Source: Octopus bimaculoides
Taxonomy: Eukaryota
Direction: 5' to 3'
Length of the DNA: 35,518 bases
Assembly (NCBI RefSeq): GCF_001194135.2
Contig: NC_069000.1
Coordinates: 42,368,337-42,403,854 of the forward strand
Position numbers and translations under genes: made by a program. The notes below the pieces were generated by a model, which saw nothing but the letters and a program-made list of their open reading frames with translations, had not been told where the DNA came from and searched no databases. Positions 9,131 to 33,804 of this stretch are shown here, piece by piece. Positions within the stretch are counted from its first letter, which is position 1; each line of letters begins with the position of its first letter.

Positions 9131-9484
9131 GGCGTAGGAGTGGCTGTGTGGTAAGTAGTTTGCTTACTAACCACATGGTCCCGGGTTCAGTCTCACTGCG
9201 TGGCATCTTGGACAAGTGTCTTCTACTATAGCCTCGGGCCGACCAAAGCCTTGTGAGTGGATTTGGTAGACGGAAACTGAAAGAAGCCCGTCGTATATAT
9301 GTATATATATATATATATATACGTCGGGCTTCTTTCAGTTTTCATCTACTAAGTCCACTAACAAGGATTTGGTCGGCCGATGCTATTGTAGAAGACACTT
9401 GCCTAAGGTGCCACACAGTGGGACTGAACCTAGAACCATTTGGTTGTGAAGCAAGTTTCTTAACAAACAGCTACGCCTGCGTCT
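9131..9484. mobile_element. Two family A SINE left arms, tail-to-tail around (TA)n
   Basis: 9131-9293 is on +, 9322-9484 is on -. The two are reverse-complement homologues. Confidence 0.9.
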
Positions 9485-11947: not shown

Positions 11948-12154
11948 AGTACAGTGTGTAAAACCCGACAAACTGCTTCTCCCTCTTTTGTTAGGCTACC
12001 ATGATGTTTATTTAAAAAAAGAGAGTTTGTGACTGTGATAAAATAATGAAACCAATACTTACTAAGCAGTTGAGCACTATATTCAAAGAGATAATTAGAC
12101 GTAAAATATAAAAATTATTAGAATTAAGAATCAAATGTGAAAATATTATCAAGG

Positions 12155-12575
12155 GGCGCAGACGTGGCTGTGTGGTGAGTAGCTTGCTTACCAACCACAT
12201 GGTTCCGGGTTCAGTCCCACTGCGTGGCACCTTGGGCAAGTGTCTTCTGCTATAGCCTCGGGTCGACCAAAGCCTTGTGAGTGGATTTGGTAGACGGAAA
12301 CTGAAAGGAGCCTGTCGTATATATGTATATGTGTGTGTATGTATGTATGTATGTGTGTGTGTGTGTGTGTGTGTTTGTGTGTCTGTGTTTGTACCCCCAA
12401 CATCGCTTGACAACCGATGGTAGTGTGTTTACGTCACCGTAACTTAGCGGTTCGGCAAAAAAGACGGATATAATAAGTACTAGGCTTACAAAGAATAAGT
12501 CCTGGGGTCAATTTGCTCGACTAAAGGCAGTGCTCCAGCATGGCCGCAGTCAAATGACTGAAACAAACAAAAGAG
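12155..12575 (+). mobile_element. Full-length family A SINE (left arm, internal microsatellite, right arm)
   Basis: tRNA-like head, CORE-like motif, internal (TA/TG)n, and a 3' arm ending CAGTCAAATGACTGAAACAAACAAAAG. The 3' arm recurs on - at 29985-30195. Confidence 0.9.
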
Positions 12576-17099: not shown

Positions 17100-17260
17100 T
17101 TTATAGAACTCGGAACTCGGGTCAATCACGTGATAACAACGTGTGGCGGGTTAAACAAGTAGCAGCTGCGCATGCGTCACCTTCTAAACGTAAACAACAT
17201 TGTTGTGGCTGCGCCCAACTGTTATGTACATTTCGTTTCGTCCTCTACTCTGAACGAATC
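17100..17260 (+). promoter_or_regulatory. Probable proximal promoter of the FAM210B-like gene
   Basis: CpG-enriched unique sequence upstream of the ATG, with E-box TCACGTGA (17126-17133), NRF1-like TGCGCATGCG (17167-17176) and Fox-type GTAAACAA (17190-17197). Confidence 0.5.
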
Positions 17261-17370: not shown

Positions 17371-18481
17371 ATGTTGCAGATGAACCGTTTGGTGCTTCAG
17401 TATCAGAACTGTTGCCATTTATCGCTTTTCAGTGCGAGCCATTACTCTTCTCGAATTACATATAAGCCTACTGCTTCTCTAATTTCTTCGACTGGACATG
17501 ATCAGAGTGGTTTCGGGACTCTGATGCCCTCAGCTCGATCGTTCTCATCGAAGACCGATCAACCGGATAACCACGATAGCAAAACCGGCCCCGTCGAACG
17601 AAAACAACAGTCGAACGACTATCGTAACAAGCATGGGTCCCATGATCGAGCCGACTTGCTAGGACGTCCATTCGCTAATCGTGACATCGATAATAGATGG
17701 CAAGGTTTACTGCACGACCGTAAACAATCCAACGACTCCACCATGGGCTTTCCATCCTATTCGGGCCCGGTTGTGAGCCTACACTCTGCTATGCAATCTA
17801 ATGTGCCGAAACCTTACTTTCCGAATGACAGATCTTCGTTCCCAACTCATAATAATATGCCTGGTGGAGGAGTAAAGGCCCAGCAAAAGTTTCTCTACGG
17901 TGGTTTGCACAGCACTCACCCGAGCAACCAGAAGAGAGAAGAGAGCTACCCGGTTAAATTCGCCGTCCCTGTCCATGCAACAACCGAAGCGGAAACACAC
18001 AACCAACCAGTTTCTATTGAGTATCAGGAAACGAAACAAAACGGGTTCGATACCGATAACCGAAATCAGACCGTATACGAAAACGGAGAAGAAAGCGATA
18101 TGAGTGTGTCTCATATTCAAGCCAGTGCCTCGACACCCTCAAATGCTTCCCAGATATATGCTAGTAGTATTAATAAGCAAGGTACCCTAGATAGTCTTCA
18201 GAATACCCATTTTACCAGATATTTTAGCCACGGTAGCACGCTGGCTCCACAACCAGAGGTCACCTATGTTTCACCGTGCCCTCAAGGAATTCAAGGTAAC
18301 GATTGCGTTTACTTCCAACAGTGGATGGAAAGCTGCCTCAGATACGGCTTAACCAACTGTGAAGAACAGCTGGAGAATTTAAAGTCCGGTCGGAAAACAT
18401 TACAGCAGGTACTTGATGAACAACAGAAAATTATCGAAGAAGCTGCTTTAAATATGAAAAGCAAGACATCATTGAACGGGG
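17371..18481 (+). CDS. First coding exon (~370 codons) of a predicted mitochondrial protein; probably the N-terminal part of the FAM210B-like gene
   Basis: Long non-repetitive ORF. ATG in ACCATG context. N-terminus is Ser/Arg/Leu-rich with RSF|SS at 17536-17550. GT donor at 18482 (ACGGGG|GTAAAT, phase 1), after which the frame turns T-rich and intron-like. The link to the downstream exon is inferred from strand and phase. Confidence 0.75.
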
Positions 18482-18684
18482 GTAAATTTATTCTATTTCC
18501 TTTTTGCTTTATCGCACATATTTGCTTCACTTTTTACGGGTATATTTGTATTTTAACTGCGAGAATTAAAACCTGTCAGAGAACGATTTTAAAATATTCG
18601 AATTGTCCACATAGTTTTGTTTCGGATTAAGATTAATGATGTAAAGAACAAAAAATTTATTCTAAAATAGCATCTTTTCTTTAT

Positions 18685-19375
18685 TGTTTAGCATCGTCCC
18701 GGGTCAGCTTTGATCGAGCAGACTTATGATTAAAGACATTTTAGTTTATTGGACTAAATTTTGAACCAGATTACATAACCTAATGTGTCCTTTTTCTATT
18801 TATGACAGAATGGTATGTGATATGTGAAAGATTTGACTGCTGTTTCTTATAGGTCGAACCCCCATGTTGAAACTCTCTTTGACTTTTCTTTCTAACAGGT
18901 CGAGCTGACAACTAAATGTTGTCCTTGTTAGATTTTGAAATAGCACGAAATAACGAGAGATGCTAGCCGTCTGCTGTAAACTAGGGTTGGGGGTAGAAAG
19001 ATCTGAAACTCGTAAAAGAACAATGATACACTGCTAATAGGTACATGATGTAAAATTTTGAAGTCGGGTAACAGTCATTATATCGATTCCAGTACTCAAG
19101 TGGTACTTGCTCTATCGATCTAGAAGGGGTGAAAGGTAACGGCGACTTCAGTGACCTTTGAACTCTGAACGTAAAAATAATAATTCTTTTTAATTTTGGC
19201 TCAGTGCCAGCGGTTTTGAGCGGAAGGGACAAATCAATTACATCGACCCCAGTACTTGACTGGTACTTTATCGACCACGAAAGAATGAAATGCAAAGTCG
19301 ACCTCGGTAGGATATGAACTCGGAACATTAAAAACCGCCCAAATATCGCCAAGTATTTGGTACGAGGTTCTGTTT
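18685..19375 (-). mobile_element. Degenerate SINE copies (family E pieces, then two tandem family D copies)
   Basis: Similar to 25215-25390 (family E) and to 21487-22635 (family D). Confidence 0.6.
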
Positions 19376-19870
19376 TAATGTGTTAATTTATTTTAGCCTT
19401 ATAATAACAAATAACAAGGCTTGAATTTTGGTCGGGTTGGAAATGGCAGATTAAAACGACTCCAGTGCTTGACTGCTTTTACTTATTTTTGTTTTTTATA
19501 AACAAAATCTAAAAGAAATTCGAAGTTTCGAAAACTTGGCAATAACAGTTGACCGAATTATTTGCATGATTACAGAAATGTGTGTCCGCCCTCCACCGCC
19601 GACTGTGTTGTTCTCCATCGGACTGTAGGTGGAATTATACGAAAGTTTTCAAAAAATATAAAGGTTTTTATTATAAATATTATTGGCTATCCTTCATTTT
19701 GAGTCATATTATTTACTGCTTTTCCCCCCCAATATAATCGTAACCAACATCAGTGAAAATGTATTTCTGGAAATTTTCATCTAAAGAATATGCATTAAAA
19801 ATGCATCATGAAGAGGTGGGGAAATGTCGAAGAGGTGGGCATGTTTATGTTATTATACTGGATTGTTTAT

Positions 19871-20050
19871 AAGGCGGCGAGCTGTCAGAAACGTTAGCAC
19901 GCCGGGCGAAATGCTCCAGTCTGATCTGGCAAGGGTTCTACAGTTGGATCCCCTTCCTAATGCCAACCACTCCGAGTGTGTAGTGGGCACTTTTCATGTG
20001 CCGGCGGCACTGGCATCGGCTACGTTCGGACAGTGCTTTTTACGTGCTGT
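19871..20050. mobile_element. Family D SINE head (+) joined to RTE 3'-UTR fragment (-)
   Basis: AAGGCGGCGAGCTGTCAGAAACGTTAGCACGCCGGGCGAAATGCT, then CCAGTCTGATCTGGCAAGGGTTCTACAG..., which is shared with 26288 and 31499. Confidence 0.7.
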
Positions 20051-20420
20051 CAGTCGGGACGAGGGAGGCCCCAGCCTGGCCACACTTTAATGACTGATAC
20101 AGAAGTAACAGTTTCAAAAGATACGTAATTCATTGGCAAAAGTTTTTGGTTCTCACAAGTGTAAATGCAAATGCTCCCTAAATATGTTATAAGTATACAA
20201 AAACTTCGGTAAATACCATTTTTATTCCTTCCATGCCTTTTTTTAACCCTTTTCTTCTCTGCATGATATTTTCATTAATTCTTTTTCTATGCCTATAATT
20301 CATTAACTAAAAGAAGGAAGTTGTTAAATATGATGGGATGATTAATAACATGATATCATTTGTATGAAATATACCACGTGATGTACCTTATACGTTATAC
20401 ATGCACGTGATATATGCCAG

Positions 20421-20459
<39 letters not shown>

Positions 20460-20547
20460 GAGAATATACAAATAATAACAACAGACGAGGACAGGTGGTG
20501 TAAATAACAAAAGTATATATTAGTATGACGCTCGGGAATACGGAAAG

Positions 20548-20584
20548 TCTTTGACGTTTCGAGCTACGCTCTTCAACAGAAAGA
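20548..20584 (-). ncRNA. Minimal type I hammerhead ribozyme motif (Penelope-like element end)
   Basis: The minus strand reads TCTTT CTGTTGA A GAGC-GTA-GCTC GAA ACGT C AAAGA. This gives a 5-bp stem I, a core with A6>U, a 4-bp stem II and a palindromic ACGT stem III. Confidence 0.6.
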
Positions 20585-20959
20585 ATACGGAGACAAGGAG
20601 AAAAACACGGAGAAATAAACTGCAACAATATTTATACACATAGACAAACACCTGCTATACTCTCAGGCTAATGACACTGCATGCTCATGTTTGCAAGTGC
20701 ACAAAATATATGCAAGCCTTTATATGAATGCACATTAACACAAGCGCCAGTGCATGATAAAGATTTTTAACATAGGCACAAGGATGCTAACATATTGTTG
20801 GAAAGGGTAGAGACAATTTTATCAACCCCCTCTATTTGATTTGTGCTATATTTTTATTGACCCCAGAACAATGAAAGATAAAGTCAACTGAGATAGAAAT
20901 AGAACCCATAACAAAAGTGTGTACAGTAATCCCTCACCATATCGTGGTTTATTATTTAA

Positions 20960-21163
20960 CCCTTTCGTTACCAACCCGGCTGAAACTGGCTCTGAGTACA
21001 AATGTCTTGTTTTCATAAGTTTTTGAATTAAAATCTTAGTCACAATTTATGTTCCTAACACCAGCTTAATGATAACTAAGTTATATTACTAAATTTTTTG
21101 TCATATTTAAAATTAATTGAAAGAAACACAGAGCATCTCAACAGAAATATGGTAACAAAAGGA
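20960..21163. mobile_element. piggyBac-type MITE, copy 1
   Basis: TTAA flanks at 20956-20959 and 21164-21167; TIR CCCTTTCGTTACCA / TGGTAACAAAAGGA. Confidence 0.85.
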
Positions 21164-21194
21164 TTAAAATATATAATAGAGAAATAATTCTTAA

Positions 21195-21412
21195 TCCTTT
21201 TGATACCAACCTGTCTGAAACCGATTCTGGCTCTGTTATATAAATGTCTTGTTTTCAAAAGTTCTGAATTAAAATCTTCCACCAAACCTTAGTCACAATT
21301 TATGTTCCTAACACTATCATTATAACTAAGTTATTTTACTAAATTCCTTGTTGTATTTAAAGTAATTGAAAGAAACACAGAGCATCTCAAAGTAAATTTA
21401 GTAATGAAAGGG
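21195..21412. mobile_element. piggyBac-type MITE, copy 2
   Basis: TTAA flanks at 21191-21194 and 21413-21416; the interior is homologous to copy 1. Confidence 0.85.
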
Positions 21413-21486
21413 TTAAAGTGAGTTCTTTTGTGCCGTAAACCATTTACCATTTCTTTGGTGTCCCCTCTTTCCCTTGATGCCCTAAG

Positions 21487-21822
21487 CACATACTTATTTT
21501 GCTTAACGGTTAATCCAGCGCTGCTCAAAACGATGAAAGCTAAAACTCACCCCGACCAGATTTGGACTCAGATCATAAAGAACAGTGTTTTGTTCAACAC
21601 TCCAAGGATTCTGCCAGCTTGTTGCTTTTTCATAATAATAAAAATCCTTTCTACTATAGGCACAAGGGCTAGTTGATTATATCGACCCCAGTGTCATGAC
21701 CCTCAAAGGCTGAAAGGTGAAGTCGGCACCAGTGAAATTTGAACTCAAACTTAAGCTGGACAAAATGCCACTAAGTAATTTTTGCGGCATGCTAACAATT
21801 CCACCAGCTCACCACATTGATG

Positions 21823-21857
<35 letters not shown>

Positions 21858-22033
21858 GATAATCCTTTCTACTAAAAGCACAAGGCCTGAAATTTGGTGG
21901 CTGGGAGGTAGTTGATTACATCAACCCTGGTGTGCAACTGGTACTTATTTCATCAACCCTGAAAGGATGAAAGGCGAAGTTGACCTCAGCAGAATTTGAA
22001 CTCAGAACATAAAGATTCTGCCAGCTTACTGCC

Positions 22034-22082
<49 letters not shown>

Positions 22083-22400
22083 TAATAATAATAATAATCC
22101 TTTTTTAGTATAGGCACAAAGCCTGAAATTTGAGGATGGGGACTAGTCAATTACATCAGCCCCAGTGTTTCACTGGTACTTAATTTATCGATCCTGTGAA
22201 GACGAAAAGCAAAGTCAACCTCGGCAGAATTTGAACTCAGAACATAAAGATTCTGTCAGCTCACCGCCTTAATAATAATAATAATAATGATAAGGCAAAT
22301 TTGTTCTAAGTGTCATTTGAACCTAGTACGTAAACATCCACAACAAATATCACAAAGTATTTTGTCTCATGCTGTAACAATTCTGCAAATTCACTATTTT
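21487..22400 (-). mobile_element. Head-to-tail array of 4-5 family D SINEs separated by (AAT)n tails
   Basis: Repeated units ...GGCACAAGG...ATCGACCCCAGT...GAAAGG...GAATTTGAACTCAG...CCAGCT, spaced by (AAT)n. Confidence 0.85.
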
Positions 22401-22418
22401 TGATAATAATTCTAAATA

Positions 22419-22635
22419 AGTTGGCAAATTGGCAGAACTGTTAGCATTCCGGTCAAAATGCTTAGCGGTATTTCATCTGTCTGCGTTCTGAGTCCAAATT
22501 CCACCCAGGTCAGCCTTGCTTCTCATCTTTTCAGAGATGATAAAATAAGTACCAGTTGAGTACTGGGGTGGATAGAATCGACTTATCCTCTCCCCCAAAA
22601 TTGCTGGCCTTGTGCCAAAATTTGAAACCATTATT
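22419..22635 (+). mobile_element. Near full-length family D SINE
   Basis: Reverse complement of the adjacent array units. Further + copies lie at about 23207, 24556, 28100 and 34445. Confidence 0.85.
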
Positions 22636-22647
22636 AATATTATAAAA

Positions 22648-22920
22648 TGGTTGAGTTCCTTTTGAGTGTTGGGCCTCACAGAGGTGAGATTGATGAGTTC
22701 CTTTTGAGCATTGGGCCTCATGGAGGCAAAGTGGCTGAGTTCCTCACAGAGGTGAGGAGGCTGAATTCCTTTCAAGCGTTGGGCATCAATGGAGGCAAAA
22801 TGGCTGAGTTCCTTTTGAACGGGCCTCACAGAGGTGAGGTGGCTGGATTCCTTTTGAGCGTTGGGCCTCGTGCAAGCAAAGTGACCGAGCTTCTTTCGAG
22901 TGTTGGGCTTCATAGAGGCA
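22648..22920 (+). repeat. ~42-bp minisatellite, about 7 units
   Basis: Unit is roughly TGGCTGAGTTCCTTTTGAGCGTTGGGCCTCA(CAGAGGTGAG/TGGAGGCAAA). Confidence 0.9.
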
Positions 22921-23208
22921 ATGACCAAGACCTTTGGTATTATGTCATGCTTGAGAAGACCCTTCAAGCCGAGCAAACCCGCAGTCATGGCAGATGCCGG
23001 TGCCACACAAATAGCACCTGTGTCGGTGGCACATAAAAGCGCCCATTACCTTCTGGAGTGGTTGACATTAGCAGGGACCTCCAGCCATAGAAAACCATGC
23101 CAAATCAAACTGGAGCCAGGTGCAGCCTTCCAGTGTGCCAGCCCAGTCAAACCGTCCAACCCATGCCAGCATGGACAACAGACGTTAAATGATGATGATG
23201 ATGATGAT
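22890..23208 (+). mobile_element. 3' end of RTE LINE or LINE-derived short element with (GAT)n tail (family C)
   Basis: Ends CCAACCCATGCCAGCATGG..GACGTTAAATGATGATG. The same 3' end occurs at 24937, 26288, 27494, 29692, 31040 and 31499. Confidence 0.85.
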
Positions 23209-23311
23209 GTAGCAAGCTGGCAGAATCATTAGCATGCCTGGGAAAGTACTTAGCAACATTTTGTCAATCTTTATATTCTAAGTTTAGATTCTGCTGAGGT
23301 TAATTTGTGGT

Positions 23312-23510
23312 CAAAGGATTCTGGATTATTTTTCTGTTTTTCTTTTTACTTAATTTTTGAGAGTGGTCAGGTTCATTTTTAGTATTCTCGTTTGTAAGAG
23401 CAGTTGAGTTTATTTCGGATATTCTCATTTTAAAAATCATCTCCGGCTAATCGTCGAAAGGACATTGGTGTTGCCTTGGCGGAGGGTTGCGCTCTCTGAA
23501 TACTCTTGTT
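23312..23510 (+). mobile_element. 3' part of HINE/DINE-1-like element
   Basis: Ends GCCTTGGCGGAGGGTTGCGCTCTCTGAATACTCTTGTT. GGCGGAGG is near-complementary to the CCTCCACC 5' sub-terminal motif at 8955. Confidence 0.5.
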
Positions 23511-24654
23511 TTATTTGTTATCCAACAAATCTATAATCAAAAAGATTCCGACTGTGACCCTTTCTTCTTTTTTTCCCTCTCTTTCTCTCTCTTCCCCCAG
23601 AACACTGGGTAAAACTATGTCTATGTTTTGTGTGCACTGACTCCCTTTACCTTGACTTTTGGGCCTTTCAACATCTTGTCAAACAATAGTTCAGCTATAA
23701 ATCTTGGCAAGCACTGCATCCATTTCACAGCCAGGCATGTCATAATTGGAGCCAGATAACAGAAAAATAAACTGTGACCCATATTACAATACAGCTTACA
23801 TATCAAGGATATAGTGTTGCTGCTACACTCACATACACACACACAAGCACACACACAAACTCCTGCACAAGCAATAGACTTCATTTTATGACTAGTTGTC
23901 GTCCTCAAAACTTAAGAGATGCTTTAGCTGAGGTCAATTACTAACCGACCAATCAGATATAAAATTTGAAATGCTCCACATTCAAATCCCTCCTCATATA
24001 TCGAGGTCAGTGTTGCAGGAGATATACACATGCATGTGCGCACATGCACATGCTCGTACATCCTTGACCTTAAGAAAACGAACACCATTTTGTTGATTTC
24101 ATAAACACTTGCTCGCCAACACAAACTTAAAACCATTGCCTTACAAACATACTATTTCTTCTTTCTAACTCTTCACCAACTGCTATGTGGTAGCTCAGTT
24201 TGCTAGAAATAGCAGCTAAGTCTCCCTCAACTCNNNNNNNNNNNNNNNNNNNNNNNNNNNNNNNNNNNNNNNNNNNNNNNNNNNNNNNNNNNNNNNNNNN
24301 NNNNNNNNNNNNNNNNNNNNNNNNNNNNNNNNNNNNNNNNNNNNNNNNNNNNNNNNNNNNNNNNNNNNNNNNNNNNNNNNNNNNNNNNNNNNNNNNNNNN
24401 NNNNNNNNNNNNNNNNNNNNNNNNNNNNNNNNNNNNNNNNNNNNNNNNNNNNNNNNNNNNNNNNNNNNNNNNNNNNNNNNNNNNNNNNNNNNNNNNNNNN
24501 NNNNNNNNNNNNNNNNNNNNNNNNNNNNNNNNNNNNNNNNNNNNNNNNNNNNNNAATACCAGTTGAGTACTGGGGTCGATGCATTCGACTACCCCCACCT
24601 TCCACCAAACTTCAAGTCTTGTGCTGAAATTTAGAATTAGTATTACTGATATAC

Positions 24655-24700
<46 letters not shown>

Positions 24701-24936
24701 TGGTTCTATATGGAATATGAGGAACTAAGTAACAAACTAAAGCTGTCTCCTCTATACAAGGTACCTGTGCCTTTCTGTCCATCATATTTTTGCCTCCCTA
24801 CACGGGGCATAATTTCATCTCCCTCCTTACTACAACTCAACTCAGTCGAAGGGTCTTTTTCCTTGTCTTGTAAGTTATTTGGCTACATCGCTTGTGTTAG
24901 TATCACGGAAAAAAGGACCCAATACCCTCTGTAAAG

Positions 24937-25083
24937 CGGGTGGCTTTAGAAAAGGCGTCCAGCCATAGAAACCCTGCCAAAGATGGCATCGGAGCTCAAC
25001 ACAGACCTCCAGCTCATTAGATCTTGTCAAATCATCCAACCCATGCTAGTATTGAAGATGGACATTAAGTGATGATGGTGATG
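24937..25083 (+). mobile_element. Family C 3' fragment
   Basis: CCAACCCATGCTAG...GGACATTAAGTGATGATGGTGATG. Confidence 0.7.
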
Positions 25084-25600
25084 TATGCATAATTTCCTAT
25101 GTAAATATATATCTTGCAGTGTATAACATGGGATAAAACGTGATGTGGTCTCAAAACCAAAATTATCCGCTGTAATTCGAGACAAGTTCTTGTTAGCACA
25201 TTCTACATGATTGTGCAATCGGCTATAAATAGCAGCTTAATCTCACTCAAATCACGCCTCACTCTCTTTTTTAAAAACAGAGGACCGCTTTAGATACTGT
25301 AGTGCAGAGAACACAGCGCTTGATCACAAAAAGTCAGGATCGCCATGGTTGGAATGCATTTGGTCACAGATCTGCTCAATCAAGAAGATAATTACGTACA
25401 GCACATTATTTGTCACTAGAGAGACCCACATAACAAAATACATTTGTTATTTGTATTCGCTTCATTGTTTTCAGATGCCATAATTGTGGTTTTGTGTTTG
25501 AGCATGGTTGAGTTGTTTGGGTGGTGTCAGATTAAATAACAAATCTGATCCGTTGTCAGGTTTAACACCCTCACCTGCCCTCCTTTGAAGTGATGTAATT

Positions 25601-25777
25601 CAGTGTTCCGCAACCAGTATGCCTGAGTACACAGATGTGCCACAGGACAATGTTAGGTGTGCCGCAGTGTAACCCGAATATAATTTTCGGCCCTATTCTT
25701 AGTCCACGTCTGCTGCCGAATTCTGAAAAGAATACCAGTGTACCACAAGTGTCAAAAAAAAGGGTTGCAGAGCCCTG
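25601..25777. mobile_element. Old hAT-like MITE
   Basis: TIR CAGTGTTCCGCAACC / GGTTGCAGAGCCCTG. The 8-bp flanks ATGTAATT and ATGCAGCT match at 5/8, and the mismatches are transitions. Confidence 0.5.
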
Positions 25778-26287
25778 ATGCAGCTCTGATTGTGTTTTCC
25801 CCCTCCAACTCTCTCAGGTCCCCAATTTTATACAGGCTTATACAGCAGACTCCAAACTGTTGCCCCAAATCAAAGCATCGCTCTGGGCAGACTGCTCTTA
25901 CTTCTGTCCCCACTTCAGGTATATTACTGCCCCCTTGAATGCTTTTGACAATCTCTACTCCAATCCCAGCATTCATATGTGTGTGTGTGTGTGTGTTTAC
26001 ACCTGCAATCTGCTGTCATTAGTATGAAATGGGTGATAGGTGACGGTCTTGTCAATTTTGCCGTCAACATCTCTTCCCCTCATTCCCTCACTTTGAGCAT
26101 AAGAAGCCATGTGGAATAAGAAATCCTTTACTTGTAAAACAATTAAGGGCTTCTATGAGAAACGGCATCAGGCTGTAAAACAATACTTCATATTACACAT
26201 ATTTGTTCAGCCTATGGAGAAACAGACCTAAAATACTAAAATAGATGTGTGTGTGTGTGTATATATACATACATATATATATATATA

Positions 26288-27493
26288 TCATCATCATCGT
26301 TTAACGTCCGCTTTCCATGCTAGCATGGGTTGGACGATTTGACTGAGGACTGGTGAAACCGGATGGCAACACCAGGCTCCAGTCTAATTTGGCAGAGTTT
26401 CTACAGCTGGATGCCCTTCCTAACGCCAACCACTCAGAGAGTGTAGTGGGTGCTTTTATGTGTCACTCGCANNNNNNNNNNNNNNNNNNNNNNNNNNNNN
26501 NNNNNNNNNNNNNNNNNNNNNNNNNNNNNNNNNNNNNNNNNNNNNNNNNNNNNNNNNNNNNNNNNNNNNNNNNNNNNNNNNNNNNNNNNNNNNNNNNNNN
26601 NNNNNNNNNNNNNNNNNNNNNNNNNNNNNNNNNNNNNNNNNNNNNNNNNNNNNNNNNNNNNNNNNNNNNNNNNNNNNNNNNNNNNNNNNNNNNNNNNNNN
26701 NNNNNNNNNNNNNNNNNNNNNNNNNNNNNNNNNNNNNNNNNNNNNNNNNNNNNNNNNNNNNNNNNNNNNNNNNNNNNNNNNNNNNNNNNNNNNNNNNNNN
26801 NNNNNNNNNNNNNNNNNNNNNNNNNNNNNNNNNNNNNNNNNNNNNNNNNNNNNNNNNNNNNNNNNNNNNNNNNNNNNNNNNNNNNNNNNNNNNNNNNNNN
26901 NNNNNNNNNNNNNNNNNNNNNNNNNNNNNNNNNNNNNNNNNNNNNNNNNNNNNNNNNNNNNNNNNNNNNNNNNNNNNNNNNNNNNNNNNNNNNNNNNNNN
27001 NNNNNNNNNNNNNNNNNNNNNNNNNNNNNNNNNNNNNNNNNNNNNNNNNNNNNNNNNNNNNNNNNNNNNNNNNNNNNNNNNNNNNNNNNNNNNNNNNNNN
27101 NNNNNNNNNNNNNNNNNNNNNNNNNNNNNNNNNNNNNNNNNNNNNNNNNNNNNNNNNNNNNNNNNNNNNNNNNNNNNNNNNNNNNNNNNNNNNNNNNNNN
27201 NNNNNNNNNNNNNNNNNNNNNNNNNNNNNNNNNNNNNNNNNNNNNNNNNNNNNNNNNNNNNNNNNNNNNNNNNNNNNNNNNNNNNNNNNNNNNNNNNNNN
27301 NNNNNNNNNNNNNNNNNNNNNNNNNATGTCCTCAGCAGTTACAGCCCATGTTTCACTGCCATGTAGCATGGCTGTTCGTACGCATGCGTCATACAGTCTG
27401 CCTTTTACTCTGAGTGAGAGTCCCTTTGTCGCCAGCAGGGGTAAGAGCTCTCTAAACTTTGCCCAGGCTATTCTTATTCTAGCAGCTACACTT
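26288..27493 (-). mobile_element. RTE-clade LINE 3' portion (mostly inside an N gap)
   Basis: Minus-strand peptide SVAARIRIAWAKFRELLPLLATKGLSLRVKGRLYDACVRTAMLHGSETWAVTAED (post-RT region of RTE ORF2). The family C 3' tail is at 26288. Confidence 0.85.
26472..27325. other. Largest assembly gap (others start at about 1099, 2126, 2444, 5741, 7199, 8537, 13778 and 24234)
   Basis: N runs, mostly adjacent to microsatellites or repeats. Their content is unknown and could hide exons. Confidence 0.99.
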
Positions 27494-27680
27494 TCATCAT
27501 CGTTTAACGTCCGCTTTCCATGCTGGCATGGGTTAGACAGTTTGACTGGAGCTGATAAGCCGGAGAGCTGCACCAAATTCCATTCTGATTTGGCATGGTT
27601 TCTACAGCTGGATGCCCTTCCTGACGCCAACCATACTCCAGGAGTATGATGGGTGCTTTTACATGCCACTGGCACAGCTT
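27494..27680 (-). mobile_element. Family C 3' fragment abutting the LINE body
   Basis: TCATCATCGTTTAACGTCCGCTTTCCATGC... is near-identical to 26288 and 31499. Confidence 0.85.
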
Positions 27681-27963
27681 CCATTTACATAGTGCATATA
27701 TATATATATATTTCAATAATAATAAATAAAAGGGTCAAATTTAATTAATTAGCTAATCAATTAATTAATTGATAATTTTACCAAGTAGTTCGGTACATTA
27801 AAATAACCTTTTTAGGTAAAATTATACAGATATTCTATAATTATAAACATAATTATAATTAGGGGTCAGCTAATTACTTTGCCACGCACCGAATTTAGAA
27901 ATAGGAGTTAAATACCTTTTCTACTACCATAATGATAGTAGAAAAGGCACTTAAAACTTTTAT

Positions 27964-28096
27964 TAGCAGTAGTAGTAGTAGTAGTAGTAGCAGCAGCAGC
28001 TGCAGTAGTAGTAGTAGTAGTAGTAGCAGCAGCAGTAGTTGTAGTAATAGTAGCAGCAGTAGTAGTAATAGTAGTAGTAGTAGTAGTAGTAGTAGT
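27964..28096. repeat. Compound (TAG/CAG)n microsatellite
   Basis: Directly visible. Confidence 0.95.
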
Positions 28097-28814
28097 TAAC
28101 AAGCTGGCAGAATCACTACTGTGTCAGGTCCAATGCAAATACCAGTCAAATACTGGGGTCAATGTAATGCACTAGCCCCTTCCTTTTAAAATTGCTGGCC
28201 TTGTGCCAAGATTAGAAAGAATTCTAGTTATTGGCTTTCACTGCTTATGTTCCGGCTGTGATCATCCTGCCTGTTCTTTTTTTATTTTATATTTTGTTCA
28301 GACTTAGTTTGTTTCCATTGTCTTATGTAGTCTTCACCCACAATCTTTTTCATAAAAAAACACTAAGGTGTTGTTTGACTGCTATTTCTAGCATGTTGAA
28401 TAATCACATAGAGGTTTCCTCTATTTGATGTTGTTGGTTTCACTTCTGCTTTTGCCACTATTGTTGTTGTTGTTGTTGCCTATCTGGCTTTTATTCTTGT
28501 TGTTGCTGTATTGCTTTTTTTTAAAATTTATTTTGTTAATTAACCCAAGATTGCTTTAGAATTAATTGTATGTGTGTGTATGTTTTCAATTTTCTAATTT
28601 TAACTAACTTCAGTGCACCCATATTATCCTTATAATCACTAATCTATCTATAAATGCATTTGGAGTGCATTTAGCTGCTGCAGTTGAAACAGTAAAATTG
28701 CTCGTTTGAACTATTTTGATATATATATGAGTTATCTTTCCTTGTTTTCTCTTTTGTGTTTGTTTTGGGTTATTTTTTTTTCTTTTTACATTTTACTGTA
28801 TTTATATCTTAATA

Positions 28815-29349
28815 CAGGACTATTCAAAAAGAACGAACCAATTTAATTATGCAATATCTTAATAAGGAAAAGCAATAGAAAACTCCAGCTAAGTCCCAAG
28901 TATTTACTCACAATCAACTTTTATTTACTGTCTTATAAGTGTTCAATGTGGCCACCACTAGAGAATTCCTCCCAGACACGTATCAGCATATCATGATCCC
29001 TTGAATTGATCATTTGTTATTCAATGTTTAACGTCATTGAGGTTAATGGGTGGGGGTGGAACATAAGCACGATCTTTTACATATCCCCCACAAGAAAAAC
29101 ATCACACCCATCGAACAACAACGGCGATCAACTCAGTGGCTCGTGATATGCTGATACGCATCTGGGAGGAATTTTCTTATCGCATTAACGTTGCCCATGC
29201 TGCAGGTGGTGGCCACATTGAACAATTGTAAGACAGGAAATAAAAGTTGATTGTGAGTAAATACTTGGGAATCAGCTGGAGTTTTCTATTGCTTTTCCTT
29301 ACTAAAATGTTGCAGAATGAAATCGGTTCATTCTTTTTGAATGACACTA
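28815..29349. mobile_element. Tc1/mariner fold-back element built from two transposon right ends
   Basis: TA flanks and ~200-bp inverted arms. + strand reads TTAINSVARDMLIRIWEEFSYRINVAHAAGGGHIEQL*; - strand reads DVFLWGYVKDRAYVPP. Confidence 0.85.
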
Positions 29350-29691
29350 TACTTCTCACTATTCAGACTCTGTCTTCCATTCACTCTGCTTTTCTCTCTC
29401 TTTCACTCTCTCTCTCTCTCTATCTCTCTTTCTCTGCTTCTTCCCTCTCTCTCTCTCTCTCTTTGCCTTTCTACTCCTTTCTCTCTCTGCTTCGTTCCCC
29501 TCCCCTTTATGGCAGCTCTCACCTCATCCTGCTCCTCATGAACACTTCATCATTTTTATGAGTTCAGCCTCCTTCCACTACAACCACCATCACTGCTACC
29601 ACTACTCCCACTGCTGCCAATCCTGCACACATGCACATCCTCACTTCTTACATTCCCCCTCCCCTCTTAATCCTCTACCACTGCTTATTAT

Positions 29692-29935
29692 TATCATCAT
29701 CATCATCATCATCATTTAATGTCCACTTTTCCATGCTTGCATGATGTTGGGCAGAATTTTGTTCAAGCAGATTTTCCATAGCTGGATGCCTCTCCTGTCA
29801 CTAACCCTCATCTGTTTCCAAGCAAGCTAATATTCACCCCTCCCCTGATCAGACATGTCTTCATGAATGATTGGAAATGAATGAAATTACACACTGCTCG
29901 TATGACAATGGCACTCGTTTACAGCTATGTCCAGG
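29692..29935 (-). mobile_element. Family C-related element with (ATC)n tail
   Basis: TCATCATCATTTAATGTCCACTTTTCCATGCTTGCATG...TAGCTGGATGCC. Confidence 0.7.
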
Positions 29936-29984
29936 CAAGTAGTGACACAAATACACACGCATACGCATGTAGATACATACTCTT

Positions 29985-30850
29985 CCACTCTATTACTTGT
30001 TTCAGTCATTTGACTGTGGCCATGCTGGAGCACCACCTTAATGGGGTTTTTTTTTAGTCGAAGAAATCAACCCTGGAACTTAGTCATTGTAAGTTTAGTA
30101 CTTATTCTACCAGTCTCTTTTGCCAAACTGCTAAGTTATGGGGACATAAACACACCAACATCGGTTGTCAAGTGATGGTGGAGAGACAAACACAGGTACA
30201 TACATACACACACACACACATACATACTGAGGGCAAAGAAATAAAAACCCGCAATATGGTAGAAGCCATAGTCACTCATAATAAAAAGAAATACTGGTGG
30301 AATGTACCTGTGAAGACCTCAATAAAATGCAATCACAACAGGCCTGATATAATGATTTGGGATAGAGAAGAGAAACTGTGCACAGTTGTGAAAATTAGCT
30401 GCCCAGCGGATGTTAACATAAAGCTGAAGATCAGTGAAAAGGAGAACACCTATGCTGAACTATTGAGAAATCTACAGTTACTCTATCCAGATTACAAGTT
30501 CAGGTTTATACCTGTAATTATTGGGGACACTGGGATATGTAACACACGGCCTAAATACCAATCTTGAGAAATTAAGCTTCTCAAAACAAGAAAAGAGAAA
30601 GCTAATCCTGGGACTGAACCCAGAACCATATGGTTGGGAAGGAAGCTTATTACCTCACAGCCATGCTTGCACCTATGTACATATATACAATGGACTTGCT
30701 TTCAGTTTCCATCTACCAAATCCACTTATAAGGCTTTGGTTGGTCAGGAGTTATTACAGAATTCTTGTCCAAGATGGCCCACTGTGAGACTGAACCCAAG
30801 ACCATGTGCTTGGAAAGTAAATTTCTTAACCACACAGCCACACTCATACC
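29985..30850 (-). mobile_element. Family A SINE pieces (right arm 29985-30195; heads 30605-30670 and 30680-30850)
   Basis: Reverse complements of the arms of the full copy at 12155-12575. Confidence 0.8.
30225..30603 (+). mobile_element. RLE domain fragment of R4/Dong-like non-LTR retrotransposon
   Basis: KYWWNVPVKTSIKCNHNRPDIMIWDREEKLCTVVKISCPADVNIKLKISEKENTY... is a PD-(D/E)xK-type endonuclease; one frameshift. Confidence 0.85.
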
Positions 30851-31498
30851 ATGTGTGTTTGTGTGTGTGTGTGTGCACATATGTTTGTAAGGATGTTTAC
30901 ATTTTGTAATCTTATGAGTTAGTTTGGTATCCACTGTTGCCATTTCCCTGTTGACAATTCATCCAGTGGCTCTGCACTTTCAAACACATGCCATCCGCAG
31001 TGAAAAATCCCTTAGTTGAAAAAGAAGAGCACCCAGTCACTGGAAACTGCCTTAACTCACTCAGCTAACCCATGCAGGCATAGAAAAACGGACGTTAAAA
31101 CAATGATGATGATGATGAATCTGTTTATTGCTGCTTGGCAAAGAAAAACAAAGAATGAAAGCAGATAATCTTTCTTGAAGAATTCCTAAGTTTGATAAAG
31201 AAGAATTTCTTTTCAGACAGCTTAATAATCACATTGTTAATCTTAATCCTGTCTTGGGAAATTTTCCCCACTCCCACCACCTCTCTTATTATCTTTTTTT
31301 TTTTCAACCTTGTTTTTTTCCATCTTCTGGTTTTCTTTGTCATTTTTTACATTTAACTTTGTATTTTTCTTCTTTCATTTCATTTTTTTTGTTTCTTCTT
31401 AAATCCTGTTGTGTCTGATGGGAAAAACAGTCCAGCACAGTTTTAAAGATAAACTTTGTAGGTCAGCATTTTTCTGATCTGACACCCACTCTGTATAT

Positions 31499-31800
31499 AT
31501 CATCATCATCATTTAACGTCCGCTTTCTATACTAGCATGGGTTGGACGGTTTGACTGAGGACTGGCGAACCAGAAGGCTGCACCAGGCTCCAATCTGATC
31601 TGGCAGAGTTTCTACAGCTGGATGCCCTTCCTAACGCCAACCACTCAGAGAGTGTAGTGGGTGCTTTTACGTGTCACCCGCACGAAAACGGCCACGCTCG
31701 AAATGGTGTCTTTTATGTGCCACCCGCATAAGAGCCAGTCCAGGGGCACTGGCAACGATCTCGCTCGAAAACCCTACAAGGCCAGTCAGGCGGTACTAAC
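31499..31800 (-). mobile_element. Family C (RTE 3' end) copy
   Basis: Near-identical to 26288-26471. Confidence 0.9.
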
Positions 31801-32283
31801 GGCTCCTTTCAGTTTCCGTCTACCAAATCCACTCACAAAGCTTTGGTCAGCCCAAGTCTATAATAGAAGACACTTATATATATGGTGGTTGCCTACTCAT
31901 GGAGAGTCTGACCACCTCTTCTACTTACACCTAAGATCTTTCATGATATCTGATGTGACACCCACATAGATTGCATATCTGCTTTAGACCATCAAGAACT
32001 GCACTTAAGTTTTGATATTTGTGGATCTTAAAATGTCTTTTGAGGCCTCCGTTAAATTTGCAGACCTTATGGCATTGACAGGTATGCGCAAATAGATAGG
32101 CAAAGTAGCAGGTGGAGGTTCAGTTTTTATGGGTCCGCAAAAGAGATTTGAGCCCAGCAAAAGAAAGGCATGAATCTGTCACAAACCGTGTGCACAAGAG
32201 GGTGGTTGGGATTCGTTTTCTCGTTGATCGTAGCATCAAGGTGGGTGAGAGAGTTGGTATATGTGAAAGCACATGGTTGGATG

Positions 32284-32590
32284 TATATAAAACAAAATAA
32301 AATGAAAAAGCTACAGAAGATTTGTATTATATGGTTAAAAAATATATTAAAATCATCATGTTAGGAGAATGATATAAAATTTTGTGTAGTGACATTGTTT
32401 GGGGAGGAATAACCGGTTTTGTATTTTCTTTTCAAATTTCTCAAATTTCTTTCGGTCAAGAAATTCAAGAAATTTGGAAAGAAAATACGAAACCGGTTTT
32501 ATATCATTTTCCTAACATGATGATTTTAATATATTTTTTAACCATATAATACAAATCTTCTGTAGCTTTTTCATTCTATTTTGTTATATA
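32284..32590. mobile_element. TA-flanked fold-back element (MITE-like)
   Basis: ~95-bp outer arms and ~31-bp inner arms are almost perfectly inverted. Confidence 0.8.
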
Positions 32591-33099
32591 TATATATATA
32601 TAACCCATGCAGTAGGGTTGCTCCCAAAACTGTGCTTGGGAAGCCAACTTCTGACCCACATTGGTTATAATAATAATAATAAGAAGAAGAAGAAAGTAAT
32701 TACTAGCTTCAATATGACTTAAGATTTTTTATGTATGTTCATCTTTTTATCAATTTCTATCATTTTTGCAATTCAGGTTCTGTAATCAGAGTCAATATTC
32801 AATATTATTATTTAAAATCAATATTCCAGATTAAAAAAGAACTTTTGAAATTCTTATTTCTAAATCTTTTAAATATTTATTCCTACCATTCTCGCTTTAC
32901 CTTTTTCTCTTACCTGGATTTTCCTCTTCAGACATGTTGTTTGCCTAGATTTCATCTCCCGTCTTAACTTTGTCACCATTGAACTACAATTCTCATCACA
33001 CGATCACACCACCTGCGCAATCCATGTCAGTCTCTTTCGTATCCTCCTCCTCTTCATCATCATCATCTTCTTCATCTTTGTCCATCTCCGTCCCTACAG

Positions 33100-33604
33100 C
33101 CACGACCACCACCGCTGTCGCAATACACTCAGCTAATGAAGAGCACCTTTTGAACAAGCATCGGTCGGTTTCAGATGTCTACCAGAAGCATCACCAAGAC
33201 TCCAAGGATGAGCAGAAAGCAGTGGAACCAGCGTTCGAGGGATGGATGCAGACGGCGCTAAACCGAATCAGGACGGTCTCTTTACGGCCGCAACAACTGC
33301 AGTATCGCCTTCATCATCATCATCATCACCACCACCATCAGCAACAACAGAGGACATTCTCTACATCAAACTGGTTTTCAAATTCTAAAGGGCCCATTAC
33401 CCCAGAAAACAAAACAGAAACACAACAAACATCAACCACAATTCCAGCCCCAGATACTGTCAGTAGTACCAGTGACGCCCCTATCGAACTAACCCGCAGA
33501 CAACAACTACAAAGAGCTGTCAAAGAGTATGGTTCTACTGTCATGGTTTTCCATATCACGATCTCCCTCATGTCTCTTGGCGGCTTTTACCTTGCAGTCT
33601 CCAG
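33100..33604 (+). CDS. FAM210B: Coding exon of FAM210B-like (DUF1279) mitochondrial membrane protein; last exon outside window
   Basis: Peptide RRQQLQRAVKEYGSTVMVFHITISLMSLGGFYLAVS matches my recollection of FAM210B (SQQLKKIFQEYG..G..LHIGISLISLG.FY.VVSS). Phase-2 donor TCCAG|GTATCC at 33605 would complete the conserved Ser. Strong phase-1 acceptor (long pyrimidine tract, CCCTACAG|) at 33099. The 5' boundary is uncertain. Confidence 0.85.
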
Positions 33605-33804
33605 GTATCCCTATTTATTCCTTCTCGTTGTTGCTCTCCCTCTTTTCATCTTATTTTCCTTTATGTTCACTACATTAAATTCGTATGCGGCTCAGTTTTA
33701 CAAATTTGTCAGGCTGCTGGTCCACCACTCAAAGAGGTTGATAGTTTGTATCTCTTCACCTCATTGTGTTTGTGATACAAGTCACTTACACTGCTTTTGT
33801 TTCC

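What the first reader, a model, noticed from the sequence alone, without database searches (positions are those of the whole stretch)
17371..18481. ~370-aa novel mitochondrial module in front of a FAM210B domain
Vertebrate FAM210B is a small protein (about 190 aa from memory). Splicing 18481 to 33100 gives at least 538 codons before the last exon. The added exon has a presequence-like start (cleavage-like RSF|SS), a long low-complexity S/N/Q/D-rich linker, and a compact Cys/helical C-terminal block. I recognise no known domain in it.
Basis: partly seen in the sequence, partly recalled or inferred. Interest (0 to 1): 0.7.

Follow-up and report, generated by a model that had tools for sequence, protein, structure and literature searches.

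The report
Conserved N-terminal extension of octopus FAM210B
The 370-codon exon is the real first coding exon of the octopus FAM210B-like mitochondrial membrane protein gene; its conserved parts (a short motif and a small three-helix cysteine domain) are shared by molluscs, brachiopods, ribbon worms, a bryozoan and a priapulid but have never been described or named.

Summary
ORF 17371..18481 is coding (dN/dS 0.21 against another Octopus species; 0.05 in the Cys block). It is 100% identical to the first 370 residues of RefSeq LOC106881681 (Octopus bimaculoides, 613 aa). That model uses exactly the proposed 18481^33100 junction onto the FAM210 (PF06916) domain.

The exon is not one 370-aa module. 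It holds four parts:
- an acid-free, basic leader;
- a conserved motif, VSLHSxMQSNVPxP..NMPGGG..HPS;
- a predicted-disordered linker;
- a ~70-aa three-helix block with C-x9-C-x7-C and GRKTL (pLDDT about 90).

An exhaustive profile search finds the block in about 78 protein clusters, usually as two tandem copies and almost always directly in front of a FAM210 domain. In many species the block and the start of the FAM210 domain lie in one exon. Named members come from Mollusca, Brachiopoda, Nemertea, Bryozoa and Priapulida. Octopods keep one copy.

There is no Pfam family, no PDB sequence match, no Foldseek match and no paper.

A conserved R-x-[FY]-S-T-S site (MPP/MIP-like) sits 20-70 aa before the FAM210 domain. 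RefSeq also models block-only isoforms in several species. The N-terminal part may therefore be cleaved off or made separately.

Mitochondrial import and function are inferred, not shown. This is a new variant of a known family, of moderate interest.

The parts
17128..17178 (+). Possible core-promoter elements about 200-240 bp upstream of the ATG: palindromic E-box TCACGTGA (17128-17135) and an NRF-1-like site TGCGCATGCGTC (17167-17178, 2 mismatches to YGCGCAYGCGCR)
   Evidence: Sequence read; pattern scan. Weak: consensus matches only.
17371..18481 (+). Coding exon 1 of the FAM210B-like gene (aa 1-370 plus the first base of codon 371); donor GT at 18482
   Evidence: 100% identity to P0001 residues 1-370; dN/dS 0.21.
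17371..17550 (+). Presequence-like leader (aa 1-60): no D/E before aa 44, Ser/Thr-rich, R6/R28/K32/R56, ends RSFSS (aa 56-60, nt 17536-17550)
   Evidence: Full-length relatives from four other phyla also begin with 25-64 acid-free basic residues, with few exceptions.
17755..17940 (+). Motif A (aa 129-190): SYSGPVVSLHSAMQSNVPKPYFPNDRSSFPTHNNMPGGGVKAQQKFLYGGLHSTHPS...; family consensus VSLxSxMQSNVPEP..PTHxNMPGGG..KY..HPSRxFSTS
   Evidence: Found in 45 family proteins. M141, V145, P146 and P148 are invariant in a 50-sequence alignment. dN/dS 0.098. pLDDT 52-72 with one helix at aa 169-180.
17941..18255 (+). Low-complexity S/N/Q/T/E-rich linker (aa 191-295), predicted disordered, poorly conserved
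   Evidence: pLDDT below 50; dN/dS 0.43; largely deleted in Argonauta.
18256..18480 (+). Cys/helical module (aa 296-370): PCPQGIQGNDC-x9-C-x7-CEEQ..SGRKTLQQVLDEQQKII; three helices at aa 310-325, 330-339 and 344-368
   Evidence: HMM hit at 18268-18471, 96 bits, the only copy in the window. pLDDT 88-95. dN/dS 0.054. 86 clusters, about 78 of them real, in the exhaustive search.
18482..33099 (+). Intron 1 (14.6 kb, phase 1): microsatellites, assembly gaps and repeat or transposon-like ORFs; no relic of a second module
33100..33605 (+). Coding exon 2 (aa 371-539): T/H/Q-rich spacer, an internal presequence-like stretch, and the first 35 residues of the FAM210 domain including the hydrophobic helix VMVFHITISLMSLGGFYLAV; donor AG|GTATCC after 33605 (phase 2)
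   Evidence: (PF06916 at 28.1 bits, cutoff 26, profile positions 1-34). The same donor position occurs in contig L001 and in dozens of ORFs ending ...FYLAVSR.
33240..33404 (+). Internal acid-free basic stretch (aa 418-472: GWMQTALNRIRTVSLRPQQLQYRLHHHHHHHHHQQQQRTFSTSNWFSNSKGPITP); the MPP/MIP-like motif R-T-F-S-T-S is at 33351-33368
   Evidence: 55 aa without D/E, 6 R/K, 9 H. The R-x-[FYL]-[SCH]-[TSG] motif lies 21-68 aa upstream of the FAM210 domain in 55 of 76 family proteins.
33501..33605 (+). Start of the FAM210A/B-like domain (PF06916); the remainder lies beyond the window
   Evidence: P0001 residues 505-592 match PF06916 at 86.5 bits, E 1.7e-24. tblastn finds no later exon in the window.

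Best explanation
Exon 17371..18481 is the genuine first coding exon of the Octopus bimaculoides FAM210B-like gene. It encodes the octopod version of an old, undescribed N-terminal architecture of FAM210B-type proteins. That architecture is shared by Spiralia (molluscs, brachiopod, nemerteans, bryozoan; an annelid keeps motif A only) and by Priapulus. The order of parts is: presequence-like leader, motif A (MQSNVPEP..NMPGGG..HPS), a disordered linker, one or two three-helix Cys modules (C-x9-C-x7-C..GRKTL), an MPP/MIP-like R-x-[FY]-S-T-S site, a short polar tail, then the FAM210 membrane domain. Octopods have lost the second module, replaced it with His/Gln-rich low complexity, and acquired a 14.6-kb intron after the remaining module. 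Inferred mechanism, in three steps. (1) The N-terminal leader drives import through the presequence route, so the extension enters the matrix ahead of the FAM210 hydrophobic helix, which then anchors in the inner membrane. (2) The small Cys module acts there as a soluble thiol- or metal-bearing or partner-binding unit serving the FAM210B membrane function. (3) It stays tethered, or is partly released at the conserved R-x-F-S-T-S site. Shown here: gene structure, coding constraint, family-wide conservation and linkage to FAM210, the predicted fold, and the absence of any described homologue. Inferred: import, compartment, Cys chemistry and function.
For: Gene model and junction. Independent linkage: in contig L001 the leader, motif A, two modules and the start of the FAM210 domain form one uninterrupted ORF ending at the same phase-2 donor as octopus 33605. 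Dozens of other ORFs do the same. Full-length RefSeq/GenBank models with module(s) plus a complete FAM210 domain: Plakobranchus, Haliotis, Liolophura, Littorina, Pinctada, Mya, Solemya, Mytilus, Aplysia, Biomphalaria, Patella, Pomacea, Tubulanus, Lineus, Lingula, Priapulus. Constraint: dN/dS 0.054 (module) and 0.098 (motif A). Fold: three helices, pLDDT 88-95 and 76.7. Cys conservation in 241 module copies: Cb in 190 of 203, Cc in 201 of 203, Cc-x7-Cd in 174. Leader: acid-free basic N-termini of 25-64 aa in most full-length members checked. Conserved cleavage-like motif before the FAM210 domain in 55 of 76 proteins, where I estimate under 1% by chance. Human FAM210A has a cleaved targeting signal (site at Val95) directly before its DUF1279 domain (PMC10245961). 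FAM210A/B are mitochondrial membrane proteins (PMC10564795, PMC5520928). No described family.
Against: No transcript data could be inspected here; the octopus junction rests on RefSeq models in two Octopus species, an Argonauta model, and frame and site logic. No targeting predictor was available. The octopus leader is only weakly amphipathic (hydrophobic moment 0.25). Mouse FAM210A was reported with its N-terminus in the intermembrane space (PMC10564795). If that applies here, a large attached N-terminal domain in the matrix is hard to reconcile unless it is cleaved off. Function is unsupported by any experiment or homologue.
Confidence: 0.6

Rival explanations
1. Tandem precursor (polyprotein). 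The gene encodes two mitochondrial products in one precursor. After import, the matrix processing peptidase (with the octapeptidyl peptidase) cuts at the conserved internal R-x-[FY]-S-T-S site. This releases a soluble matrix protein (motif A plus Cys modules) and a canonical-size FAM210B, whose short acidic tail can then adopt the vertebrate topology.
For: The motif is conserved 21-68 aa before the FAM210 domain in 55 of 76 proteins. It fits the R-2/R-10 pattern R-x-(F/L/I)-x-x-(S/T/G) (textbook knowledge). A second copy, HPSRQFSTS, closes motif A in many members. In octopods, where module 2 is gone, a 55-aa acid-free basic stretch ending RTFSTS is kept. Human FAM210A is cut at Val95 at the equivalent place (PMC10245961). 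Module-only isoforms or models exist in Haliotis rubra, Liolophura, Dreissena, Gigantopelta, Ostrea, Saccostrea, Babylonia and Lineus, which shows the N-terminal part can stand alone. The reported N-out topology of FAM210A (PMC10564795) would require removal of a large N-terminal domain.
Against: No cleavage data. About a quarter of members lack the motif, for example Solemya, Tubulanus and Priapulus. The motif could instead be part of the module's C-terminal helix or a relic of the ancestral presequence.
Confidence: 0.3
2. Two transcription units or alternative products in octopus. Exon 1 mainly makes a module-only protein from a transcript ending in intron 1. FAM210B is mainly made from a start inside or just upstream of exon 2 (in-frame ATG at 33025, or M420 'MQTALNRIRTVSL...'). 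The 613-aa fusion would then be a minor or model-derived form.
For: The frame of exon 2 stays open upstream of the acceptor to 32970, with an ATG at 33025. The M420 stretch looks like a presequence. Module-only models are common in other spiralians. O. vulgaris annotation splits off a 54-aa fragment of the module.
Against: Three independent octopod models join the parts. M420 is Val in O. sinensis. The read-through tail after 18481 is not conserved between Octopus species, so there is no conserved short-isoform end. In many species the parts are in one exon.
Confidence: 0.15
3. Intermembrane-space disulfide module. The Cys block is a CHCH-like, MIA40-oxidised helical domain facing the intermembrane space, in line with the reported N-out topology of FAM210A.
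For: One exact Cx9C lies within helix 1, and further Cys lie at helix ends. FAM210A N-terminus was reported in the intermembrane space, and FAM210A interacts with YME1L there (PMC10564795).
Against: There is only one Cx9C; the other spacing is Cx7C. An odd number (three) of Cys is conserved, and the fourth is missing in about a third of copies. No CHCH Pfam hit. The module lies on the N-terminal side of the membrane helix, behind a classical leader, so it would enter the matrix first. The flank before the helix is strongly basic (LTRRQQLQRAVK), which favours the matrix side by the positive-inside rule.
Confidence: 0.12
4. Chance ORF or mis-annotated non-coding sequence.
For: None beyond the low complexity of the linker.
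Against: dN/dS 0.21 overall and 0.05 in the module. Homologues in five phyla at E down to 1e-59.
Confidence: 0.01

Closest known systems
Vertebrate FAM210B (and FAM210A), PF06916 / DUF1279 mitochondrial membrane proteins
   Same: The C-terminal FAM210 domain matches at 86.5 bits, with its hydrophobic helix. There is a short basic C-tail and no C-terminal coiled coil, as in FAM210B. A cleavage-like R-x-F-S-x-S site with a short polar tail sits before the domain, comparable with the FAM210A targeting signal cut at Val95 (PMC10245961). Other annotators name relatives 'protein fam210b' or 'F210B-like'.
   Different: About 450 extra residues lie in front of the cleavage-like site, holding motif A and the Cys module, which have no counterpart in described FAM210 proteins. 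No named hit of the module search fell outside Spiralia and Priapulus; many hit clusters remain unnamed.
Spiralian 'uncharacterized / F210B-like / DUF1279 domain-containing' models (e.g. Mya arenaria P0112, Mytilus P0114, Aplysia P0117, Liolophura P0093, Lingula P0097)
   Same: Same gene family and same order of parts. Same phase-2 intron inside the FAM210 domain.
   Different: Most molluscs have two tandem Cys modules. Octopods have one, scoring slightly closer to copy 1 (102 against 94 bits), with no detectable second copy. Octopods also have His/Gln-rich filler, a longer disordered linker, and a 14.6-kb intron between the module and the rest.
Twin-Cx9C / CHCH intermembrane-space proteins
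   Same: Short helical domain with a Cx9C pair on one helix.
   Different: Only one Cx9C, three helices rather than a helix-turn-helix hairpin, an odd number of conserved Cys, no Pfam CHCH match, and an N-terminal leader.
N4BP1 C-terminal UBA-like domain (PF23054)
   Same: 18 of 46 module copies give weak partial matches (best single-copy E 3e-4). Whole proteins reach 24-28 bits against a cutoff of 27. The match covers GRKTLxQ[IV]FxEQ..I, profile positions 11-36 of 47.
   Different: The octopus module itself does not hit. Only half of the profile is covered. The predicted structure makes this stretch one long helix rather than two UBA helices. Foldseek finds no UBA structure.
Mitochondrial tandem precursors cut internally by MPP (e.g. 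yeast Arg5,6; recalled from the literature, not tested here)
   Same: A possible way of working: two functional units in one imported precursor, separated at a presequence-like internal site.
   Different: No evidence of cleavage here; unrelated proteins.

Membership tests
FAM210A/B family (PF06916, DUF1279) | Match to the PF06916 profile above the gathering score | tested here: met
   P0001 scores 86.5 bits (cutoff 26) at residues 505-592. The in-window part of exon 2 scores 28.1 bits on profile positions 1-34.
FAM210A/B family (PF06916, DUF1279) | Hydrophobic membrane helix at the start of the domain | tested here: met
   VMVFHITISLMSLGGFYLAV is read directly in exon 2. It is a 28-aa acid-free, uncharged stretch.
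FAM210A/B family (PF06916, DUF1279) | Mitochondrial targeting signal and mitochondrial localisation | tested here: inconclusive
   Only composition heuristics were run: no D/E in aa 1-43, R/K present, RSFSS. No TargetP or MitoFates, and no experiment.
FAM210B rather than FAM210A subtype | No C-terminal coiled coil; protein ends shortly after the domain | tested here: met
   P0001 ends 21 residues after the PF06916 match (...KPPKPKPISK). No phylogeny against vertebrate paralogues was run.
Spiralian/priapulid 'Cys-module + FAM210' architecture (undescribed; defined here) | At least one copy of P-x-G-x-Q-G..C-x9-C-x7-C..G-R-K-T-L..E-Q module N-terminal to the FAM210 domain | tested here: met
   Window 18268-18471, 96 bits. 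P0001 module scores 144.9 bits.
Spiralian/priapulid 'Cys-module + FAM210' architecture (undescribed; defined here) | Motif A (VSLxSxMQSNVPxP..NMPGGG..HPS) upstream of the module | tested here: met
   aa 129-190; invariant columns.
Spiralian/priapulid 'Cys-module + FAM210' architecture (undescribed; defined here) | Two tandem modules (typical of molluscs) | tested here: not met
   Only one copy in octopod proteins and in the whole window, intron included. Single-copy forms also occur in Lingula and Priapulus.
Twin-Cx9C / CHCH | Two Cx9C motifs on antiparallel helices | tested here: not met
   The spacing is C-x8-C-x9-C-x7-C. There is one Cx9C only, three helices, and no CHCH Pfam hit.
UBA_N4BP1_C (PF23054) | Full-length profile match above gathering score and a three-helix UBA fold | tested here: not met
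   The octopus module has no hit at E<=1 (part A). Relatives match only positions 11-36 of 47, at 24-28 bits. No Foldseek match.
MPP-cleaved tandem precursors | Demonstrated internal cleavage giving two stable products | not testable with these tools
   Only the conserved R-x-[FY]-S-T-S motif and module-only isoforms are available.

The most novel reading that the evidence does not exclude
The spiralian/priapulid FAM210B gene encodes a mitochondrial two-in-one precursor. A conserved internal MPP/MIP site releases a soluble matrix protein, built of motif A and one or two three-helix modules with a conserved Cys triad. That protein binds a metal or iron-sulfur cofactor and cooperates with the membrane-bound FAM210B in iron or heme handling or protease regulation. 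The same soluble protein is also made on its own by a conserved short isoform. The module would then be a new cofactor-binding fold and a direct clue to the still unknown molecular function of FAM210 proteins.
Probability: 0.12. Interest if true: 0.75.

Novelty: new variant of a known kind. Interest (0 to 1): 0.45.

Why it matters
FAM210A and FAM210B are linked to several processes. These include mitochondrial translation, cristae remodelling through YME1L/OMA1 (PMC10564795), and erythroid iron import and heme synthesis (Yien et al. 2018, cited in PMC12904366). Their molecular activity is still unknown. A strongly constrained soluble domain that has stayed fused to FAM210B across at least five protostome phyla is a 'guilt by fusion' clue to what the membrane domain works with. 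The conserved Cys triad, the conserved internal cleavage-like site and the recurring module-only isoform each give a concrete, testable hypothesis. For annotation, the module and motif A deserve a profile, because they currently carry no Pfam family. For octopus genomics alone the result is ordinary: RefSeq already predicts the gene model correctly.

Tried and rejected
- **Pfam** scans of the exon, the full proteins and 46 module copies gave only sub-threshold hits (ANG-1, PANTS-like, Gly_rich_SFCGS, partial UBA_N4BP1_C).
- **PDB sequence profile searches** with A2 and A3 gave nothing below E 0.019; a synapsin-3 stretch is judged chance.
- **Foldseek against PDB** with both models gave zero matches.
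- **A second, degenerate module** in octopod exon 2 or in the 14.6-kb intron was searched for and none found.
- **The search for homologous proteins with the short module alignment A3** returned almost nothing: 1 hit from 113 candidates. The word index seems to fail on short profiles, so this was a wasted search.
- **Literature** searches for FAM210 with molluscs or N-terminal extensions, and for a sequence string, found no relevant paper. Yien et al. 2018 is not held.
- **Bacterial promoter/terminator scan** upstream is not applicable to a eukaryote and found nothing.
- **Model coordinates** are not exposed, so Cys-Cys distances could not be measured.
- **An untested lead from memory:** human FAM210A may begin 'MQWNVP...', which resembles motif A 'MQSNVPEP'. 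I could not fetch the human sequence, so this is a lead only.

Full report
**1. What is in the sequence**

The window is Octopus bimaculoides genomic DNA. It is AT-rich and full of microsatellites, N gaps and repeat ORFs.
- An ATG at 17371, with an in-frame TAG two codons upstream, opens a 419-codon ORF.
- A GT donor follows base 18481 (GGG|GTAAAT). A pyrimidine-rich acceptor (ccctacag|CC) precedes 33100.
- The phase-1 junction restores the frame of an exon ending at 33605 (AG|GTATCC). That exon encodes the first 35 residues of a FAM210A/B-like domain (PF06916, 28.1 bits on profile positions 1-34).

The 370 codons are 100% identical to residues 1-370 of NCBI LOC106881681 (P0001, 613 aa). The rest of the domain is outside the window. 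Orthologous models exist in O. sinensis (605 aa, 87% identity) and Argonauta hians (588 aa, 51%).

**2. It is coding, and only parts of it are constrained**

I compared the exon with a genomic contig of another Octopus species (L003, 83% aa identity). Nei-Gojobori dN/dS values:

| Region | dN/dS |
|---|---|
| Whole exon | 0.21 |
| C-terminal Cys block | 0.054 |
| Motif at aa 129-200 | 0.098 |
| Leader | 0.47 |
| Linker | 0.43 |

AlphaFold2 with a 50-sequence family alignment gives matching results:
- Residues ~300-368 are confident (pLDDT 88-95) and form three helices (310-325, 330-339, 344-368).
- The motif A region is at pLDDT 52-72.
- Everything else is below 50.

The module folded alone gave the same three helices (pLDDT 76.7). 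So the '370-aa module' is a composite: leader, motif A, disordered linker, and a ~70-aa domain.

**3. The module is a family, and it travels with FAM210**

A profile of the Cys block (A2) was searched exhaustively against 1.84 billion representative proteins. It found 86 clusters, 70 of them at E<1e-10. Eight are repetitive junk.

The real hits are 220-560-aa proteins that usually carry two tandem copies. Wherever the contig allows, they continue into ...KEYGSTV.VFH..SL.SLGGFYLAVS|R. That is the FAM210 domain, broken at the same phase-2 intron as octopus 33605.

In contig L001 the leader, motif A, two modules and the start of the FAM210 domain form one uninterrupted ORF ending AG|GTAAGG. This is independent proof that these parts belong to one protein.

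Named members:
- Gastropods: Plakobranchus 'protein fam210b', Haliotis, Littorina, Aplysia, Biomphalaria, Patella, Pomacea and others.
- Bivalves: Pinctada, Mya 'F210B-like protein', Solemya, Mytilus, Dreissena, oysters, unionids.
- A chiton (Liolophura).
- Nemerteans (Tubulanus, Lineus).
- A brachiopod (Lingula).
- A bryozoan (Watersipora).
- Priapulus caudatus.
- The annelid Paralvinella, which keeps motif A but no Cys module.

No named hit fell outside Spiralia plus Priapulida. Many hits are unnamed metagenome or SRA contigs.

**4. Anatomy of the family**

The consensus order is:
1. An acid-free basic N-terminus of 25-64 aa.
2. Often one or two [EI]G[IF]QG..helix..QGxQG stretches.
3. Motif A, VSLxSxMQSNVPEP..PTHxNMPGGG..KY..HPSRxFSTS, found in 45 proteins.
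4. Module 1.
5. Module 2.
6. QQRRxYSTS.
7. A 20-70-aa polar tail.
8. The FAM210 domain.

In 241 module copies from 142 proteins, three Cys are almost invariant (C-x9-C-x7-C). A fourth Cys, eight residues upstream, is present in only about two thirds. G-x-Q-G, W, G-R-K-T-L and E-Q are also nearly invariant.

Octopods have a single module, slightly closer to copy 1 (102 against 94 bits). There is no detectable second copy in exon 2 or anywhere in the window, including the intron. His/Gln-rich low complexity fills the gap.

**5. No described relative**

- Pfam gives only sub-threshold matches.
- The most recurrent is a partial match of the GRKTLxQIFxEQ..I helix to the N4BP1 C-terminal UBA profile. 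It covers positions 11-36 of 47, scores 24-28 bits against a cutoff of 27, and appears in 18 of 46 copies but not in the octopus copy. I treat this as a lead, not membership.
- PDB sequence profiles and Foldseek against PDB with both models find nothing.
- Full-text searches found no paper on this extension.

**6. How it probably works (inference)**

Vertebrate FAM210A/B are mitochondrial membrane proteins with a cleaved targeting signal just before the DUF1279 domain. In human FAM210A the site is Val95 (PMC10245961). See also PMC10564795 and PMC5520928.

Nearly all full-length members of the present family that I checked start with an acid-free, basic leader. The simplest reading is import by the presequence route. 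The extension would then enter the matrix ahead of the FAM210 helix. The flank before that helix is strongly basic (LTRRQQLQRAVK), which also points to the matrix side.

In the matrix the conserved Cys triad would be reduced. That suggests metal or cluster binding, or redox sensing. [quoted passage not shown] This link is speculative.

**7. The most interesting open point**

A motif R-x-[FYL]-[SCH]-[TSG] lies 21-68 aa before the FAM210 domain in 55 of 76 proteins. I estimate a chance expectation below 1% per protein. The motif matches the classical MPP/MIP R-2/R-10 pattern.
- It sits where vertebrate FAM210A is cut.
- A second copy (HPSRQFSTS) closes motif A.
- Octopods, despite losing module 2, keep a 55-aa acid-free stretch with 6 R/K and 9 H that ends RTFSTS (window 33240-33404).

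RefSeq also predicts module-only isoforms or genes in Haliotis rubra, Liolophura, Dreissena, Gigantopelta, oysters, Babylonia and Lineus. Mouse FAM210A was reported with its N-terminus in the intermembrane space (PMC10564795), which a large attached domain could hardly follow.

Together these facts make a 'tandem precursor' reading plausible, in which the soluble N-terminal protein is cut from FAM210B after import. I give it about 0.3. It is not shown.

**8. Rivals for the octopus locus**

The exon-2 frame is open upstream of the acceptor, with an ATG at 33025, and M420 starts a presequence-like stretch. An internal promoter giving a short FAM210B is therefore conceivable. However, M420 is Val in O. 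sinensis, and the read-through tail after 18481 is not conserved.

An intermembrane-space CHCH-like role is disfavoured. There is a single Cx9C, an odd number of conserved Cys, and the module lies N-terminal to the membrane helix.

**9. Verdict**

- This is a new variant of a known family, carrying an undescribed domain and motif.
- Interest is moderate (0.45). It would be higher if the cleavage or cofactor hypotheses hold.

Noticed in passing
window 4737-4748: A perfect palindromic NRF-1 consensus, TGCGCATGCGCA, lies 12.6 kb upstream of the ATG, next to a (TA)n/(GA)n microsatellite. It could be a distal promoter, an upstream non-coding exon or another gene's promoter.
   Followed up: partly
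window 35213-35518 (+): A reverse-transcriptase fragment (PF00078, 46 bits) of a LINE-like element lies in intron 2 and runs off the window end.
   Followed up: yes
window 26434-27684 (-), 30172-30567 (+), 3784-4284 (+): Further transposon-like ORFs, with no Pfam hit at E<=0.01. One has an RT-C-terminal-like tail interrupted by a large N gap. Two share a related '...NRPDI[VM]IWD...' segment. All lie in intron 1 or upstream of the gene.
   Followed up: partly
window 707-1024, 9253-9504, 12012-12413 (-), 30521-30909, 31661-31969: Translations share 'FSF(R/H)LPNPLTRLWS..Y.RRHLPK...', which suggests at least five copies of a short interspersed repeat scattered through the window.
   Followed up: no
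window 32970-33099 (ATG at 33025): The exon-2 reading frame stays open for 130 nt upstream of the acceptor and holds an in-frame ATG followed by a poly-Ser tract. This is a possible alternative first exon or start for a short FAM210B isoform.
   Followed up: partly
related proteins P0091, P0092, P0115, P0063 and others: Module-only isoforms recur across molluscs and nemerteans. They diverge from the long isoform at a conserved point just after the R-x-Y-S-T-S motif. Many end in similar tails (..(E/K)W(N/A/P)*, ..(E/K/S)RD*), which hints at a conserved alternative 3' end.
   Followed up: partly
P0095 (Octopus vulgaris): The O. vulgaris annotation carries a 54-aa 'hypothetical predicted protein' that is just a fragment of the Cys module. 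The gene is probably mis-modelled there.
   Followed up: no
family-wide, e.g. P0006 aa 55-95, P0010 aa 57-96: Extra [EI]G[IF]QG ... GP(S/D)[IV]QG[IV]QG stretches lie upstream of motif A in many members but are absent from octopods. QGxQG seems to be a recurring punctuation motif of the whole extension.
   Followed up: no
window 1000-3000, 5700-5900, 13780-14160, 24230-24560, 26470-27320: Large runs of N (assembly gaps) and long TA/CA/GA microsatellites. Intron content and length are therefore only approximately known.
   Followed up: no
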